Shown here: positions 11,451 to 30,143 of the stretch, piece after piece
Layout: each line of letters opens with the position of its first letter
Position numbering within the stretch: position 1 is the first letter of the stretch
Source: Octopus sinensis
Taxonomy: Eukaryota
DNA length: 64,000 nucleotides
NCBI RefSeq assembly: GCF_006345805.1
Contig: NC_042997.1
Span: forward strand, 26,226,001-26,290,000
Reading direction: 5' to 3'
The notes under the pieces: generated by a model
Databases searched by the model: none
Seen by the model: the letters and a program-made list of their open reading frames with translations, nothing else
Told to the model about the DNA's origin: nothing
Program-made: the position numbers and the translations under genes

Positions 11451-11706
11451 GTAAGGAATTTTTATATTATTTCTTTAAAGTTGGTTTTATCTCGTCTTTT
11501 AAAGCATGTCTTTTGGTAATTCTATCTGTATGCCTTCGATTAACCTATCATCGCTTAGCACCTCTGAACTGAAAATATGAAATACATTCAGGTGTTCATC
11601 ATATCCTCATTATTTCAACTGTCTTCTTCTATAGCGCCAGGTCTACTAATGCTTTTCAAGGGAATTTGGTAGATGAAAATTATGTGATAGACATTTGTAT
11701 ATAATA

Positions 11707-12108
11707 GGCGCAGGCGTAGCTATGTGGTAAGTAGTTTGCTTTCGAACCACATGGTTCCGTGTTCAGTCCCACTGCGTGGCATCTTGGGCAAGTGTCTTCT
11801 ATTATAGCCTCGGGCCGACCAAAGCCTTATGAGTGGATTTAGTAGACAGAAACTGAAAGAAGCCCGTCGTGTGTGTATGTATGTATGTATGTATGTATGT
11901 ATGTATGTATGTATGTATATGCTTGTGTATCTGTGTTTGTACCCCCTCCACCATCACTTGACAACCGATGTCGGTGTGTTTACGTCCGCGTAAAAAGAGT
12001 GATAGAATATCACTTACAAAGAATAATTCCTGGGGTCAATTCGTTCGACTAAAGGCGGCGCTCCAGCATGCCCACAGTCAAATGACTGAAACAAGTAAAA
12101 GAATAAAA
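11707..12108 (+). mobile_element. SINE family C
   Basis: Same as 4707; internal (TATG)n. Confidence 0.85.
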
Positions 12109-12130
12109 GAATATATATATATATATATAT

Positions 12131-12747
12131 ATTATATAAAAGGGCTTAGTAAAATAAATTACTTTGCCGCATACTGAACTCATTAGAAATAGCAGCTAAA
12201 AAACTTTTTTAAAGCTATTTCTAATACTTAAAGAAAATCTCTCTCATATATAGTGTTTGCTTAATTCAACTCACAAAAGTTTGGGGGTAAGGACATCGAA
12301 AAATCAAATGCTAAGGTTATTTGAGAACGTACGTTTCAAGATTAGTCAAAACAACACTTCTATCATCAGCTCAGAAATTCCTTGGTTTGGATTTGGAAAC
12401 ACTGAAAATAAGAACATACCCTTTCGAAGATCTGCTCGTAACTAACAGTGCCAACAAATTCAAATAAGCAAGCGAAGAATCTCTGTTCTCCCCTTTCCAC
12501 CAGCGTGGGTTAAAATCATCAAACACTATGCTTATTTCGGTAAAATCCGAAGCATTAATCAGAGGGAGATTAATTATAATTTCAACAATTGAGGGCAACT
12601 TTTGTGAGTTGAATTAAGCAAACACTATATATGAGAGAGATTTTCTTTAAGTATTAGAAATAGCTTTAAAAAAGTTTTTTAGCTGCTATTTCTAATGAGT
12701 TCAGTATGCGGCAAAGTAATTTATTTTACTAAGCCCTTTTATATAAT
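12131..12747. mobile_element. MITE-like or foldback element with 151-bp perfect inverted repeats
   Basis: 12131-12281 is the reverse complement of 12597-12747; 315-bp core. Confidence 0.8.
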
Positions 12748-12840
12748 GTAATAATTTGAATTCGCCTTGAATGGTCCCTTTGCATACTGAACACTTGGTG
12801 AAATTGATTAATAATTAATTAATTTTGCCCTCAATTGTTG

Positions 12841-12879
<39 letters not shown>

Positions 12880-12930
12880 ATATATATGTATGTATGTATG
12901 TATGTATATGTATGTATGTATATATGTATG

Positions 12931-12995
<65 letters not shown>

Positions 12996-13007
12996 CACAC
13001 ACACACA

Positions 13008-13066
<59 letters not shown>

Positions 13067-13514
13067 CAGTGCACATTTAAACACATAAGAGGTATCTGTC
13101 ATAGGATTCCTAGCACGCTAGAAGGAACAGCCACAATCCGAACCACTATTAAGGATAAACATCGAAGGAAAGTAAAAATAAAAACATTTACCATCTATCT
13201 GCTGGATCATGGTTTCTGACATTTTTAGCAAATAAAATAATTTGCTAGGCGGAGTCTTCATATATATATATATATATGTGTGTGTATGTATGTGCATATA
13301 AGTATATCAAAATAAATATATATCCATATCTATGTGTGTGTATGGTATGTGTATGGTATGTGTATGTGTATGGTAGGTTGTATGTATGGATGTATGACTA
13401 TATAGACGCATGAGCACGTAAATGGTGTAAGGTGGAACTCGTGAATCTTCTTCCTTTCGATTGTGGATGGAAGCCCTCCGTCGGTTACGACGACGAGAGT
13501 TCCGGTTGATCCGA

Positions 13515-13852
13515 ATCAACGGAACAGCCTGCTCGTGAAATTAACCTGTAAGTGGCTGAGCACTCCACAGACACGTGTACCCTTAACGTAGTTCTCGGGG
13601 ATATTCAGCGTGACACAGAGAGTGACAAGGCCGGCCCTTTGAAATACAGGTACAACAAAAACAGGAAGTAAGAGTGAGAGAAAGTTGTGGTGAAAGAGTA
13701 CAGCAAGGATCACCACCATCCCTTGCCGGAGCCTCGTGGAGCTTTTAGGTGTTTTTGCTCAATAAACACTCACAACGCCCGGTCTGGGAATCGAAACCGC
13801 GATCCTATGACCGCGAGTCCGCTGCCCTAACCACTGGTCCATTGCGCCTCCA
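13515..13852 (-). mobile_element. tRNA-derived SINE family A (tail 1)
   Basis: Head ggaggcgcaatggaccagtggttagg...gtttcgattcc with A and B boxes; homologous to 30708 and 46378. Confidence 0.85.
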
Positions 13853-26765: not shown

Positions 26766-27032
26766 GAAAAGAGGTAGGTGATATCGGCATCTGGTGTTTG
26801 TATGGTGATTTGGAGTAGCGGTTTCGAAACCCCGGCTGGAAGATTATTACTAAAGTGATGTTTTTTAACTGTTTGTTGTTCCTGGTCGTTTTTCTGTGGA
26901 GAAATTGAGTCTTTTTTCTTTTCTTTTTACTGCTTTTTCTTCTTTCTAAAAGATATTCAGCCGCGGTTTATATTTTTAATCTTTATGTTTTCTTTATTTA
27001 AACGGAATTAGGTTGAAGTATATATATATATC

Positions 27033-27087
<55 letters not shown>

Positions 27088-27116
27088 TTGGTATCCATAA
27101 GACCCGAAATGGCAAG

Positions 27117-27450
27117 TAAGTTAGTTAGCTAGTTAGTTAATTTGGCTCAAAAGCAAATAGCAAGGCCATGTAGGGGGACATGGAGTTAAGTACAGGGTGG
27201 TGTTCATGTAAAGAGTTCAGGCCACTTGAGGTCCAGGGAGGCTTTGAACAAAGCGATCGTCGGCATCTTCACCATCTCGTCTGGCAGCTTGTTCCACGGA
27301 TCCGCAACCCGGACGGAGAAAGCTCCTCTCCTTCGATTGAGATGAAATCGTCGCAGGTAGAGCTTTTCGGAATGACCCCGCAGCCGACGCTCCGGAGCAG
27401 GAGTGAAGAACAGCTCTTTCGAGAGGTTACACTTCCCGCTTATGATGTTG
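27117..27450 (-). mobile_element. CR1-clade LINE 3' end, 5'-truncated, (CTAA)n tail
   Basis: Near-identical to 63186-63510. Confidence 0.85.
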
Positions 27451-27610
27451 GACTATGTAAGTGCTACGGAACGACTGTCGTTAGACACCCAGTTCAATAA
27501 TAGTATGAATAAGAAGTCTATTGCGGGTCGTGTGTGAGCATGTATATGATAAATAAAATGAGACAACAAAGCCAAGGTAGTGTGAAATTTCTAGGACATT
27601 TATAAAGAGA

Positions 27611-27658
27611 GTCTTACAGCTGTTTCAGGGATATGAGGGATACCTCTTCATCAGAGAC
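27611..27658 (-). ncRNA. Minimal type I hammerhead, left arm of foldback
   Basis: - strand: GTCT CTGATGA AGAGGTAT-CCCTC-ATATCCCT GAAAC AGCT GTA AGAC; stem III is the palindrome ACAGCTGT. Confidence 0.8.
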
Positions 27659-27961
27659 GATATGAGAAAGTTAAATAGATGGAAATAGAACAGTTCAATA
27701 TAGGAAGTTATTCTGTAAAGGGAGCGATATAGGAAGTATAAGTGGTCATAAGAGAATAAAAATAAATATATACGTTGGATGCTGCAGTTGCAGTTCAATT
27801 ATCCAAGTACTTTCCTTGGATAATTGAACTGAAACAATAACATCCAACATATATTTTTATTTGTATCCTTATTTCCATTTATATTTCCTATATCTCACCC
27901 TTTCCAAAATAACCTTTTATGTCGAACTCTACTATTTCCTTCTATTTAACACTCTCATGTC

Positions 27962-28009
27962 GTCTCTGAAGAAGGGATATCCCTCATATCCCTGAAACAG
28001 CTGTAAGTC
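27962..28009 (+). ncRNA. Minimal type I hammerhead, right arm of foldback
   Basis: GTCT CTGAAGA AGGGATAT-CCCTC-ATATCCCT GAAAC AGCT GTA AGTC; one stem I mismatch. Confidence 0.75.
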
Positions 28010-30004
28010 TACATTTCTCTTTATAAATGTCCTAGAAATATATATATCGTCAGTAGATCATAAATCCGAAACTCTAAGTTATAGAGCAGTCGATAGCTAT
28101 GGTCGGTCTATGGGGTTACGCTGAGTTTCTTCAGATCCTAATGGCCGGTAGCCTATGACCTCTCTTGAAAGTTGAGTGAGACAAGACCTCGTAGCTACTT
28201 GTTGAACGCTCGAACAAAGGGTTAAGCACAAGGGATTTTCTCCCTTAGACCACAATCTATAGTCGGCCATATGTCTTCTATATTATAATGAAGGAAGCTG
28301 CTAATCAATTAGGTATTTAACAATTACTAAAAGAATGTAATTATTAAAGGCTTGACCTTCTGGAAATTTTTTCTAAATTCATATTCCAAGAAGTTTCCTG
28401 TAATTTCGATTTCTGAAATTTATTGAATATTTGAACTACAAGTTTTTCACAAATTTAAATATTCGTTGAATTCACAGCGGAGTAGATTTTAATGTTTAAT
28501 AAACAATATCATTCATTTGCAAAAATTTCTCACCTCTATTTTCATTAATGATAATTTAATATATGATATATTCACTTCAAGGTTTTCATTTCGAGTTTTA
28601 ATTCGCTATTTGCAAAACCCACAATTTATTCTATACACGTAATGTAAAAGAAATATTTATTGAATGGATAAATGCTATTTAGCAAAACAGCCATGGAACT
28701 TTGAGGATTATGATACGGGGCACGATTTCAAGAATATTCTCAGTTTCCGGAGTTAGTTAAATTAATATTTTTGATAAAATGAAAATTTTTAAATATACTG
28801 GTATAATTTTGTTTGTTTTTTTTAAGTTAAGAAGTAATTTTGTTGATATGGCCGTTTGGAACGCTATAAGCTTTACTATAATAACTATGCGATCACTGCT
28901 ATTTCTATCACGCTAAACGTAGTTGGGTTACCTTGAAGTTTGTTTAAATTAGAAATATATTACAACTACGATAAATTACTGAAAGTAAGTGAGATTCTTT
29001 TATAAATTGAAATTTTTTAGGAAAATTTACTTTCTAAATTTCCTTTTATTATTGAATATTTCAAGTTCACGAATTTAAATATTCGGTACAAGATAGCTTT
29101 TAACGAGCTTTTATAGGTTTCACTCCCTGGAAATTTTTGATAAATTCCTCTATATCGACAAATATGCAGTTTCGAAATGATTGTTATTACTTAAATTCAC
29201 GAATTTAAATATTCGTTGCCAAGCTTTACATTTACTGCAGAGTCAGTTTGAACATTTGATAAACAATATTGATATGATATGGCGAAATTTTTCGTTTTCA
29301 TTTGCGACACAGTCTCTCACTCTCTCTCCCGCCTCTAAAATTGATTTCATTAATAATAATCTATTTAATATATATTCATTGCAATTTTTTCATTTCAAAT
29401 TTTATTTAGTTATTTCAGATGAGGAAATCAGGTATTTTGTTGACTTAAATTTGCTGTGTAAATGTTCTCAGTTTATTGTTTATACATATTGGAAACAAAT
29501 TATATTGGACAACTTATTAAAACTTACTGAAGCTACGGACTCACGCGACTTATTTCTTTTCTCTCGTTATCTAAAAATTATCAAATAAATTTGTTACTAT
29601 GACTATTTGATATGCTATAGATATTTAGGTATCTCTATGTGATCCCTACTATTATTTTGCACACTAAAGTATTTGGACTACCTTGGTGTTTATTTAAAAA
29701 AAGATTATGACTGTGATAAAATGGTGAACGCAATATTTACTAAGCAAGTAAGCATTATTATATAAATAAATAATTAGACATAAAATATCGTAAAATTATT
29801 AGAATTGGGAAACAAATGTGAAAATATTATCAAGTGGCTAGCAGAAAACCGCCCAGATGGCGGTCTTTCTGCTAGCACGAATAATGACGATTTTCTCATA
29901 ATTTCCGAGAGAATATCTATGGCATCTGACGACTTTCTTAGTTCAGGTCACGCGAACTGTTTCTAATGCATACATGTAGATTTCTACAAGTAAATGTGCG
30001 TGTA

Positions 30005-30058
<54 letters not shown>

Positions 30059-30143
30059 GTGTGTGTGTGTGTGTGTGTGTGTTTGTGTGTGTGTATGTGT
30101 GTGTGTTTGAAAGTACTAAAATATTTTCGTTTTTCTATTATAG

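What the first reader, a model, noticed from the sequence alone, without database searches (positions are those of the whole stretch)
11451..30143. Sense-strand ribozymes inside the introns of a secreted-inhibitor gene
Kazal gene B intron 1 (12.5 kb) contains the whole PLE in sense orientation. Its pre-mRNA would therefore carry two identical hammerheads 4627 nt apart (GUA at 16355-57 and 20982-84); intron 2 carries another at 27962. Inference: the two copies could pair their palindromic stem III in cis. That would cut out a ~4.6-kb unit-length PLE RNA able to circularise, letting the element use the host promoter, and could also limit or gate host mRNA production.
Basis: inference. Interest (0 to 1): 0.72.

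Follow-up and report, generated by a model that had tools for sequence, protein, structure and literature searches.

The report
Dead retrotransposon with ribozymes in intron
A decayed Penelope-like retrotransposon sits, in the same direction as the gene, in the first intron of a small octopus-type Kazal inhibitor gene and carries its family's usual pair of hammerhead ribozyme motifs; this is an ordinary transposon insertion, and nothing here shows that it regulates the gene.

Summary
The sequence facts largely hold. Two identical type-I hammerhead motifs lie on the + strand at 16273-16363 and 20900-20990. They sit in the two pseudo-LTRs (15861-16393 and 20489-21020, about 98% identical) of a partial-tandem Penelope-like element (PLE) inserted in a (TA)n microsatellite.

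The three-exon Kazal gene model is supported by GT-AG sites, reading phase, a Pfam Kazal hit and a paralogue with the same 37-nt first exon. There is no transcript evidence.

Three corrections:
- The PLE is complete in extent but dead, with four frameshifts and one in-frame stop.
- "Stem III" is self-complementary only through two G·U pairs.
- The third motif cleaves at 28005, not 27962. Its helix I is decayed, and it is buried in a 466-nt hairpin with an antisense twin.

Hammerheads in both pLTRs, dimer action and unit-length excision are published PLE features or hypotheses. Published work also reports weak or protein-assisted PLE hammerhead cleavage, and no splicing defect from slow intronic ribozymes.

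Verdict: an ordinary intronic transposon, a new member of a known kind. The host-gating idea is untested and unlikely. Interest is low.

The parts
11414..11450 (+). Kazal gene B exon 1 (37 nt; start codon and signal-peptide start MSKVFLFVLLLS; donor CAG|GTAAGG)
   Evidence: Sequence read. A homologous 37-nt exon 1 of paralogue A lies at 5332-5296 on the minus strand. This was the only exon-1-like match in the window.
11451..23912 (+). Intron 1 of Kazal B (12,462 nt). It is filled with microsatellites, tRNA-derived SINE copies and the PLE.
   Evidence: GT at 11451 and AG at 23911-23912. Repeat content.
15861..16393 (+). Upstream pseudo-LTR, i.e. the 3' part of a 5'-truncated tandem copy. It abuts a (TA)n/(TATG)n microsatellite on its left.
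   Evidence: Direct repeat with 20489-21020 at about 98% identity; identical from 16252 to 16393.
16273..16363 (+). Hammerhead motif, upstream copy. Helix I 16273-78/16358-63; core CUGAUGA 16279-85; helix II with 60-nt insert 16286-16345; GAAA 16346-49; helix III/loop CGAUUG 16350-55; GUA 16355-57; predicted cleavage after 16357.
16567..19440 (+). PLE coding remnant: N-terminal domain, RT with a YRDD motif near 17630, thumb/HTH-like region, N-rich expansion, and C-terminal GIY-YIG. It is broken by four frameshifts and an in-frame TAA at 17582-17584.
   Evidence: tblastn of the intact homologues P0069, P0070 and P0007 gave five colinear pieces alternating between two frames.
20489..21020 (+). 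Downstream pseudo-LTR, followed directly by a (TA)n microsatellite.
20900..20990 (+). Hammerhead motif, downstream copy, identical to the upstream one. CUGAUGA 20906-12; GUA 20982-84; predicted cleavage after 20984.
23913..24039 (+). Kazal B exon 2 (127 nt; GAVLNATAQSQRCPICLPVVKMICASNKITYWNECIMRWKIC)
   Evidence: The start of paralogue A's exon 2 is conserved.
24040..30143 (+). Intron 2 of Kazal B (6,104 nt)
   Evidence: GT at 24040 and AG at 30142-30143.
27580..28045 (.). Inverted pair of short, 5'-truncated tails of a second PLE-type family. The 3' ends point outward. The sense RNA folds into one long hairpin.
   Evidence: Arms are 82% complementary. MFE is -258.2 kcal/mol for 466 nt. The arrangement matches the inverted 5'-truncated copies described for PLEs (PMC8557442).
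27960..28011 (+). Third hammerhead-like motif (sense). CUGAAGA 27966-72; helix II 8 bp; GAAAC-AGCU-GUA with GUA at 28003-05; helix I decayed (4 of 6 pairs, interrupted).
   Evidence: No Rfam hit.
27609..27660 (-). Antisense twin of the third motif. CUGAUGA 27654-27648; GUA ending at 27615; helix I 4 bp; one mismatch in helix II.
30144..30198 (+). Kazal B exon 3 (RGKIPKDVKKIHDGPCPK plus stop). It supplies the sixth cysteine of the Kazal domain.

Best explanation
This is a decayed insertion of a Penelope-like retroelement with a C-terminal GIY-YIG endonuclease. Its features fit the published description of the 'Hydra' clade. It integrated as a partial tandem of about 1.1 units (5.16 kb) into a (TA)n microsatellite that happens to lie in intron 1 of a small secreted Kazal-type gene, in the same orientation as the gene.

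Each pseudo-LTR carries the family's own type-I hammerhead. That is why there are two identical ribozyme motifs exactly one unit (4627 nt) apart. The hammerhead is of the PLE kind: a 2-bp helix III capped by a quasi-self-complementary loop, so it is built to act, if at all, as a double hammerhead between two copies. It also has an unusually long helix II of 60 nt.

Intron 2 holds a separate relic, a head-to-head pair of truncated tails of another PLE-type family, each with its own hammerhead motif.

Shown: the anatomy, the orientation, the motif quality and the ORF decay. Inferred: the sense orientation is a coin-flip outcome of insertion rather than a selected arrangement. Any cleavage of the Kazal pre-mRNA would be slow and inefficient. 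Splicing would therefore be little affected, and this copy gains nothing because it cannot make protein.
For: - Direct repeats, their near-identity and the microsatellite flanks.
- Hammerhead motif quality and chance expectation.
- Coding region colinear with intact 722-806-aa homologues but broken in five places.
- 2977 homologues of the thumb piece in the representative library. The 11 full-length ones I aligned share YRDD, FLD and CNC...CPL...C motifs, and some give weak GIY-YIG hits.
- The window's own endonuclease piece hits Pfam GIY-YIG at E=0.007.
- Closest named relatives are Octopus proteins.
- An O. bimaculoides relative carries a hammerhead of the same build: a 59-nt helix II, helix III ACGUACGU, and helix I changed on both sides. 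Another relative has the identical helix III 8-mer ACGAUUGU.
- Literature: hammerheads in both pLTRs and the dimer model (PMC4209133); partial tandems, inverted truncated copies, (TA)n targeting and Hydra-clade features (PMC8557442); weak or protein-assisted cleavage that is dispensable for insertion (PMC11167929).
Against: - There are no RNA data, so cleavage, circles and host effects cannot be excluded.
- The pLTRs are still about 98% identical and the hammerhead segments are identical. Motifs that are still active are therefore possible, and PLE protein could be supplied in trans by other copies.
- The double-hammerhead fold is within 1 kcal/mol of the bimolecular MFE, so pairing is not implausible.
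- Clade assignment rests on matching a verbal description, not on a phylogeny.
- Pfam recognises RVT_1 in only 1 of 11 full-length homologues.
Confidence: 0.75

Rival explanations
1. In the Kazal B pre-mRNA the two hammerheads pair in cis as a double hammerhead and excise a 4627-nt unit-length PLE RNA. That RNA can be ligated into a circle, so the element rides on the host promoter, and the cleavage reduces or gates Kazal B mRNA output.
For: - Two identical sense motifs sit one unit apart.
- The double-hammerhead is 6.6 kcal/mol better than two monomers.
- Self-complementarity of helix III is kept in relatives through different bases.
- Precedents exist: circRNAs from hammerhead retrozymes (PMC7229834 and PMC4918200, listed) and the intronic CPEB3 ribozyme, which lowers host expression (PMC10919898).
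Against: - The element is coding-dead.
- PLE hammerheads have low or protein-dependent activity, and no in vivo ends were found for PAc.
- Slow intronic hammerheads leave splicing intact.
- Helix III is only -5.8 kcal/mol with two G·U pairs. Helix I is six pairs, five of them A-U, with predicted probability at most 0.27 and at most 0.01 in context.
- Closing a 4.6-kb loop costs entropy that was not included.
- Circles of full-length PLEs were not reported in the papers read.
Confidence: 0.08
2. The insertions do affect the host transcript, but not through ribozyme chemistry. A sense-oriented AAUAAA inside each hammerhead's helix II, with a U-rich stretch downstream, could cause premature polyadenylation in intron 1. 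Separately or in addition, the 466-nt hairpin in intron 2 could act as double-stranded RNA, a substrate for editing or small-RNA production.
For: - AAUAAA lies at 16326-31 and 20953-58, 26 nt before the hammerhead cleavage site. The O. bimaculoides relative has AAUAAA 24 nt before its site, although the rest of the insert differs.
- The hairpin MFE is -258 kcal/mol.
- Retrozymes are reported as depleted from introns, which suggests genic insertions carry a cost (bioRxiv 10.64898/2026.07.22.740005).
Against: AATAAA occurs 22 times in the PLE and 42 times in intron 1, about one per 235-300 nt. Its presence in a 60-nt insert is therefore weak evidence. There are no 3'-end data. That intronic poly(A) signals are commonly suppressed is my own knowledge and was not tested here.
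Confidence: 0.1
3. The hammerhead matches are chance look-alikes in AT-rich repeat DNA and are not ribozymes at all.
For: - Rfam scores are below the gathering threshold (18.4 against 34), and whole-window scans report nothing.
- The monomer MFE is not the hammerhead fold, and its z-score is -0.66.
- The 10.1-11.1 pair is G·U rather than G-C (read from the sequence).
Against: - None of 200 simulated windows gave a motif of this quality.
- The motif is in the position and orientation expected for a PLE, inside the pLTR.
- Relatives in other genomes carry hammerheads of the same build at homologous elements.
Confidence: 0.04

Closest known systems
Penelope-like elements with hammerhead motifs in both pseudo-LTRs (Cervera & de la Pena 2014, PMC4209133; Craig et al. 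2021, PMC8557442)
   Same: Partial-tandem insertion that forms pLTRs. A type-I hammerhead in each pLTR on the sense strand. A short helix III with a (quasi-)palindromic loop, implying dimer action. A single ORF with RT followed by a C-terminal GIY-YIG. Insertion into (TA)n. A neighbouring inverted pair of truncated copies.
   Different: Helix II is about 60 nt, against 4-6 bp in the published minimal motifs, so Rfam and the usual descriptors miss it. Helix III self-pairs only through two G·U pairs. The ORF of this copy is broken. The protein family is very divergent: Pfam RVT_1 hits 1 of 11 homologues.
'Hydra' clade of C-terminal-EN PLEs (Craig et al. 2021)
   Same: Highly divergent RT. No internal CCHH motif seen. 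CxxC ... E ... N ... CxH around the endonuclease core (CQLC...E...NN...CVH in the 18913-19440 piece). A (TA)n target. A canonical hammerhead core. Reported in molluscs.
   Different: Hydra elements are described as generally under 3 kb, whereas this unit is 4.63 kb, partly through N-rich expansions and a 1-kb 3' region. Membership was not tested by phylogeny.
Intronic self-cleaving ribozymes that influence host mRNA (CPEB3 HDV-like ribozyme, PMC10919898; amniote intronic hammerheads in RECK/CTCL/DTNB, reviewed in PMC6155905)
   Same: A sense-strand self-cleaving motif inside an intron of a protein-coding gene. The idea that cleavage competes with co-transcriptional splicing.
   Different: Those ribozymes are single, conserved across species at orthologous positions, and fold as active monomers. 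Here the motifs belong to a decaying transposon, need a partner copy, and have no known conservation or activity.
Retrozymes and other hammerhead circRNA elements (PMC4918200, PMC7229834; bioRxiv 10.64898/2026.07.22.740005)
   Same: Two hammerheads flank a unit that could be excised with 5'-OH and 2',3'-cyclic-phosphate ends and then ligated into a circle. Animal retrozymes are proposed to derive from PLE pLTRs.
   Different: Known circles are 170-1000 nt and non-coding. A 4.6-kb PLE circle has not been reported in the papers read. Retrozymes are reported as depleted from introns.
Co-transcription with a host gene followed by ribozyme release (R2 and other non-LTR elements with HDV-like ribozymes). 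This comparison rests on my own knowledge; Ruminski et al. is cited in the reference list of PMC6155905.
   Same: The concept of using a host promoter and freeing the element's 5' end by self-cleavage.
   Different: A different ribozyme class and a different element class. R2 has a dedicated rDNA target and proven processing. Here the arrangement is a single, probably accidental insertion.

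Membership tests
Hammerhead ribozyme, type I | Conserved core CUGANGA ... GAAA ... U-H at a three-way junction | tested here: met
   CUGAUGA, GAAA and GUA| are present in both intron-1 copies. The intron-2 motif has CUGAAGA, GAAA and GUA|.
Hammerhead ribozyme, type I | Helices I, II and III formed by flanking sequence, with helix I open | tested here: met
   Intron-1 copies: helix I 6 bp, helix II 10 bp plus insert, helix III 2 bp plus GAUU loop. The intron-2 sense copy has an interrupted helix I.
Hammerhead ribozyme, type I | Score at or above the Rfam RF00163 gathering threshold | tested here: not met
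   18.4 bits against 34 for 16273-16363, because the model penalises the 54-nt insertion. No hit for the intron-2 motif.
Hammerhead ribozyme, type I | Site-specific self-cleavage | not testable with these tools
   Needs in vitro transcription of monomer and tandem constructs.
Penelope-like element (EN+) | Reverse transcriptase domain | tested here: inconclusive
   Pieces align colinearly to 722-806-aa proteins carrying FDxxxYYxSI, MGSxDSA, YRDD and FLD motifs. Pfam RVT_1 hits only 1 of 11 homologues (E=6e-4) and none of the window pieces. No PDB sequence hit.
Penelope-like element (EN+) | GIY-YIG endonuclease fused to the RT | tested here: inconclusive
   Pfam GIY-YIG at E=0.007 and 17.1 bits, below the 22.6 cut-off, for 18913-19440. 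4 of 11 homologues match, best E=9e-4. VIYKC...YIGCT is visible by eye.
Penelope-like element (EN+) | Pseudo-LTRs from partial-tandem insertion, with a hammerhead inside them | tested here: met
   533-nt direct repeats 4627-4629 nt apart, each with the hammerhead.
Penelope-like element (EN+) | Microsatellite, (TA)n, target preference (a feature of several clades) | tested here: met
   The insertion is bounded on both sides by (TA)n/(TATG)n.
Hydra clade of PLEs | Placement within the Hydra cluster in an RT/EN phylogeny or clustering | not tested
   No reference Hydra sequences were available. Only the verbal description was matched.
Kazal-type serine protease inhibitor | Kazal domain with six cysteines | tested here: met
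   Pfam Kazal_1 at 28.4 bits (cut-off 21) and Kazal_2 at 27.4 bits (cut-off 22.8) on residues 25-70 of the spliced product. Six cysteines are present.
Kazal-type serine protease inhibitor | The gene is transcribed and spliced as modelled | not testable with these tools
   No RNA data. No matching protein in the database. Support is indirect: splice sites, phase and paralogue structure.
Regulatory intronic ribozyme (CPEB3 / amniote HH9-HH10 type) | Conservation at the orthologous intron across species, and monomeric fast cleavage | not testable with these tools
   No searchable cephalopod genome collection. The motif architecture (2-bp helix III) argues against monomeric activity.
Retrozyme / hammerhead circRNA element | Circular RNA of unit length detected | not testable with these tools
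   Needs RNase R treatment and divergent RT-PCR, or long-read RNA data.

The most novel reading that the evidence does not exclude
The paired sense hammerheads are still active when PLE protein is supplied in trans or by dimerisation. They would then excise a 4.6-kb unit-length, possibly circular, PLE RNA from the Kazal B pre-mRNA. That would make a host secretory-gene promoter drive a non-autonomous PLE and measurably lower Kazal B output. It would be the first case of a full-length PLE RNA released from a host intron by a long-range double hammerhead.
Probability: 0.05. Interest if true: 0.6.

Novelty: new member of a known kind. Interest (0 to 1): 0.2.

Why it matters
As it stands, it matters little. 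It is one more PLE copy with the family's expected hammerheads, and it happens to lie in the sense orientation in an intron.

It has modest value as an annotation lesson. This PLE lineage in octopods carries hammerheads with a helix II of about 60 nt, which Rfam thresholds and the standard descriptors miss. Its proteins are almost invisible to Pfam. Both the elements and their ribozymes will therefore be under-counted in cephalopod genomes.

One is what PLE hammerheads are for. The other is whether a long-range double hammerhead can compete with splicing.

Tried and rejected
- Rfam at gathering thresholds and at E<=5 over the whole window returned no hammerhead, only microsatellite-driven miRNA false positives. 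The motif appears only in a short-stretch search.
- My first regex scan mis-assigned the cleavage dinucleotide and returned nothing. It was rewritten as an exhaustive enumeration.
- Pfam on the five reading-frame pieces gave no RT hit and only a sub-threshold GIY-YIG hit.
- A PDB sequence search with a profile of 11 full-length homologues found nothing.
- The spliced Kazal protein found no homologue in the large protein database, so annotation could not confirm the splice.
- A proper covariation test of the hammerhead was not possible:
  - No second copy of this family exists in the window.
  - blastn of the window's PLE against the O. vulgaris locus found only one 124-nt, 73%-identical stretch of internal sequence.
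  - blastn against the O. bimaculoides locus found only about 68%-identical coding DNA.
  - Neither locus gave any pLTR match.
  - Cephalopod genomes are not in the searchable DNA collections.
  - I therefore relied on three individual relatives (L003, L007, L002).
- Loci fetched in parallel (L002, L005-L007) did not reach the script sandbox, so they were examined with the DNA search and DNA alignment instead.
- My first dot-bracket for the dimer was topologically wrong, because it made helix I intramolecular, and gave an impossible energy. It was corrected to the true double-hammerhead pairing.
- I considered that the frame changes might be spliceosomal introns retained in the PLE. I rejected this because adjacent pieces overlap or abut, and a same-family protein (P0007) reads straight through the positions of the stop and of one frameshift.
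- I considered an alternative first exon closer to exon 2, which would put the PLE outside the gene. No candidate was found.

Full report
**What was checked first**

I read the three claimed sites and scanned both strands of the window for the type-I hammerhead layout: CUGANGA, helix II, GAAA, helix III, U-H, and helix I closing the ends. Exactly two strict hits came back, both on the + strand. They are at 16279-16357 and 20906-20984, with identical sequence. Helix I is 6 bp (UUUUAG/CUAAAA), and helix II is 10 bp with a bulge, closing a 60-nt insert. After GAAA comes CGAUUG, and the cleavage triplet GUA is at 16355-57 and 20982-84.

In 200 simulated sequences with the same trinucleotide statistics, the loose version of the motif occurred 0.1 times per window. 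A motif of this quality never occurred.

Rfam finds nothing in the whole window, either at gathering thresholds or at E<=5. When only 161 nt are searched, Hammerhead_1 aligns over its whole model at 16273-16363, with 18.4 bits against a gathering score of 34. The 54-nt insertion in helix II is what costs the score.

**What carries the motifs**

The two motifs lie in direct repeats at 15861-16393 and 20489-21020. The repeats are about 98% identical, and identical from 16252 to 16393. The left repeat abuts a (TA)n/(TATG)n microsatellite, and the right repeat runs straight into (TA)n. The element therefore landed in a microsatellite, and no target-site duplication can be defined.

Between the repeats is a coding region. 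In tblastn it is colinear with residues 1-795 of an intact 806-aa protein (P0069) and with a 722-aa one (P0070). It comes in five pieces that alternate between two reading frames: 16567-17307, 17333-17653, 17680-18003, 18290-18493 and 19006-19425. There is also an in-frame TAA at 17582, where a same-family protein (P0007, 78% identical) reads leucine.

The pieces carry RT-like motifs (FDINSYYSSI, MGSSDSAEV, YRDD, FLDITLDL). At the C-terminus there is a Cys-rich linker followed by a GIY-YIG-like core, VIYKC...YIGCT. Pfam support is weak. GIY-YIG scores E=0.007 for the window piece. Among 11 full-length homologues, GIY-YIG hits 4 and RVT_1 hits 1. A PDB sequence search found nothing.

The family is nevertheless large, with 2977 representatives at E<=0.001 for the thumb piece. 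Its named relatives are Octopus proteins, so the window is most likely octopod.

Several features fit the published description of the 'Hydra' clade of Penelope-like elements (PMC8557442). These are the C-terminal endonuclease, CxxC...E...N...CxH around the endonuclease core, insertion into (TA)n, a canonical hammerhead core, and extreme RT divergence. I could not run the phylogeny that would prove membership.

Partial tandems forming pLTRs, hammerheads inside them, and adjacent inverted truncated copies are all standard PLE anatomy.

**The host gene**

Exon 1 (11414-11450) encodes MSKVFLFVLLLS and ends CAG|GTAAGG. Exon 2 (23913-24039) follows an AG, and exon 3 (30144-30198) ends in TAG. The phases fit.

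The 72-aa product passes Pfam Kazal_1 and Kazal_2 above their cut-offs, and the domain spans the exon 2/3 junction.

A paralogue on the minus strand has a homologous 37-nt first exon (5332-5296). Its second exon (838-703) also starts G-A-V-L-N, after a 4.46-kb intron. That supports pairing 11450 with 23913. No closer exon-1-like sequence exists.

There is no transcript evidence, and the protein has no homologue in the large database.

**The third motif**

At 27966 there is CUGAAGA, then a clean 8-bp helix II, then GAAAC-AGCU-GUA with the GUA at 28003-05. The predicted cleavage site is therefore 28005, not 27962. Helix I is interrupted, and Rfam gives no hit even in a 501-nt search.

The motif is one arm of an inverted repeat spanning 27587-28039. 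The other arm carries the twin on the minus strand, with CUGAUGA at 27654-27648. This looks like a head-to-head pair of 5'-truncated tails of another PLE-type family.

In sense RNA the 466 nt fold into a single hairpin of -258 kcal/mol that buries the hammerhead. A ribozyme role in the pre-mRNA is unlikely.

**Can the two intron-1 copies act together?**

Helix III is only A-U and C-G pairs closed by GAUU. The 8-mer ACGAUUGU pairs with itself through two G·U wobbles, at -5.8 kcal/mol, against -11.1 for the classical ACAGCUGU.

A correctly drawn double hammerhead has both helix I and helix III formed between the two copies. It evaluates to -35.6 kcal/mol. Two separately folded monomers give -29.0, and the bimolecular MFE is -36.5. 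The partnership is therefore thermodynamically reasonable for isolated 91-nt RNAs.

Comparative hints agree:
- An O. bimaculoides relative (L003) has a hammerhead of the same build, with a 59-nt helix II. Its helix III is the perfect palindrome ACGUACGU. The central pair is swapped relative to the window's (U-A becomes A-U), and the next pair is G-C instead of G·U. Helix I is changed on both sides at two pairs.
- A more distant relative (L007) has the identical ACGAUUGU.

The central pair can only form between two molecules, so this is anecdotal support for dimer function.

Against efficiency, in 290-590-nt native context the predicted probability of helix I is at most 0.27 for the upstream copy and at most 0.01 for the downstream copy. 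The core-proximal part of helix II is also weak. The entropy cost of closing a 4.6-kb loop is not included in these numbers.

**What is already known**

Cervera and de la Pena (PMC4209133) reported hammerheads in both pLTRs of PLEs. They proposed that the motifs work as dimers and measured low cleavage in vitro. Craig et al. (PMC8557442) restate the hypothesis that these motifs cleave tandem precursor RNAs, and note that the function is unclear.

In the only reconstituted PLE (PMC11167929), the hammerhead cleaved only in the presence of the element's protein. Core mutants did not affect insertion. No RNA-seq reads began or ended at the cleavage site.

For host effects, a hammerhead placed in an intron did not reduce splicing, and only fast ribozymes abort processing (PMC2995048; PMC10919898). 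The CPEB3 ribozyme is an established case of an intronic ribozyme tuning its host. A 2026 preprint reports animal retrozymes as PLE derivatives that are depleted from introns.

**Judgement**

The most likely account is an accidental sense-orientation insertion of a now-defunct PLE. Its hammerheads are family baggage. Cleavage, circles and host gating remain possible but are unsupported. From what is known of PLE hammerheads and of slow intronic ribozymes, they are improbable, at about 5-10%.

A non-ribozyme effect is no better supported. One candidate is an AAUAAA 26 nt upstream of each cleavage site, which the O. bimaculoides relative also has. However, AATAAA occurs about every 235 nt in the PLE.

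Novelty: a new member of a known kind. Its mildly unusual feature is a long-helix-II hammerhead that standard tools miss.

The element was examined piece by piece, and no repaired or consensus sequence was built.

Noticed in passing
window 27580-28045: A 466-nt near-perfect hairpin (MFE -258 kcal/mol) would form in the sense RNA of intron 2, from a head-to-head pair of truncated PLE-type tails. Long intronic double-stranded RNA of this kind is a plausible editing or small-RNA substrate in a cephalopod.
   Followed up: partly
window 16326-16331 and 20953-20958; L003 about 6860 (minus strand): A canonical AAUAAA lies inside the long helix II insert, 26 nt upstream of the hammerhead cleavage site. 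The O. bimaculoides relative has one 24 nt upstream of its site, although the rest of the insert differs. The poly(A) site and the ribozyme site may coincide. However, AATAAA is common here, about one per 235 nt in the PLE.
   Followed up: partly
window 5332-5296 and 838-703 (minus strand) versus 11414-30198 (plus strand): Two small Kazal-type genes with the same three-exon layout sit head to head, with their first exons about 6 kb apart. The gene B protein has no homologue in the 5.8-billion-protein database, so gene B appears to be unannotated. Gene A was not searched.
   Followed up: partly
window 13552-13854 versus 30706-31007: A tRNA-derived SINE of about 300 nt in intron 1 has an inverted copy, 96-97% complementary, about 500 nt downstream of the Kazal B stop codon. 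The two bracket exons 2-3. If both are transcribed, such pairs can promote back-splicing.
   Followed up: no
window 12128-12281 versus 12597-12750: An inverted repeat with 154-nt arms, 99% complementary and 315 nt apart, lies in intron 1. It looks like a MITE or a young hairpin element.
   Followed up: no
whole window (e.g. 23477-23549, 10979-11049, 36351-36422): All sub-threshold Rfam 'miRNA' matches (mir-297, mir-466, mir-3149, mir-1277 and others) fall on (TATG)n, (TA)n or (CA)n microsatellites. They are artefacts.
   Followed up: yes
alignment A1 (P0069, P0070 and nine others): Full-length proteins of this PLE lineage (about 570-806 aa) are almost invisible to Pfam (RVT_1 in 1 of 11, GIY-YIG in 4 of 11, all weak) and have no PDB sequence match. 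The precomputed domain most often attached to fragments is PF26215 (HTH_animal).
   Followed up: partly
L004 4976-5018 and 7343-7385; L005 7096-7138; L006 7072-7114; L002 7482-7525; L007 1881-1914: Related elements in unidentified ENA assemblies carry their own sense-strand CUGANGA...GAAA core matches, with short helix II spacers and (quasi-)self-complementary helix III sequences (ACACAGUGU, ACUAUUUAGU, ACGAUUGU). Clear helices were read by eye only for L002 and L007; helix II is unclear in L004-L006. In L002 and L007 the motif lies unexpectedly close behind the thumb region.
   Followed up: partly
window 18494-19005: The PLE coding remnant contains an asparagine-rich low-complexity expansion of about 130 codons relative to the intact homologue P0069. 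The same-family protein P0007 has a similar N-rich stretch.
   Followed up: no
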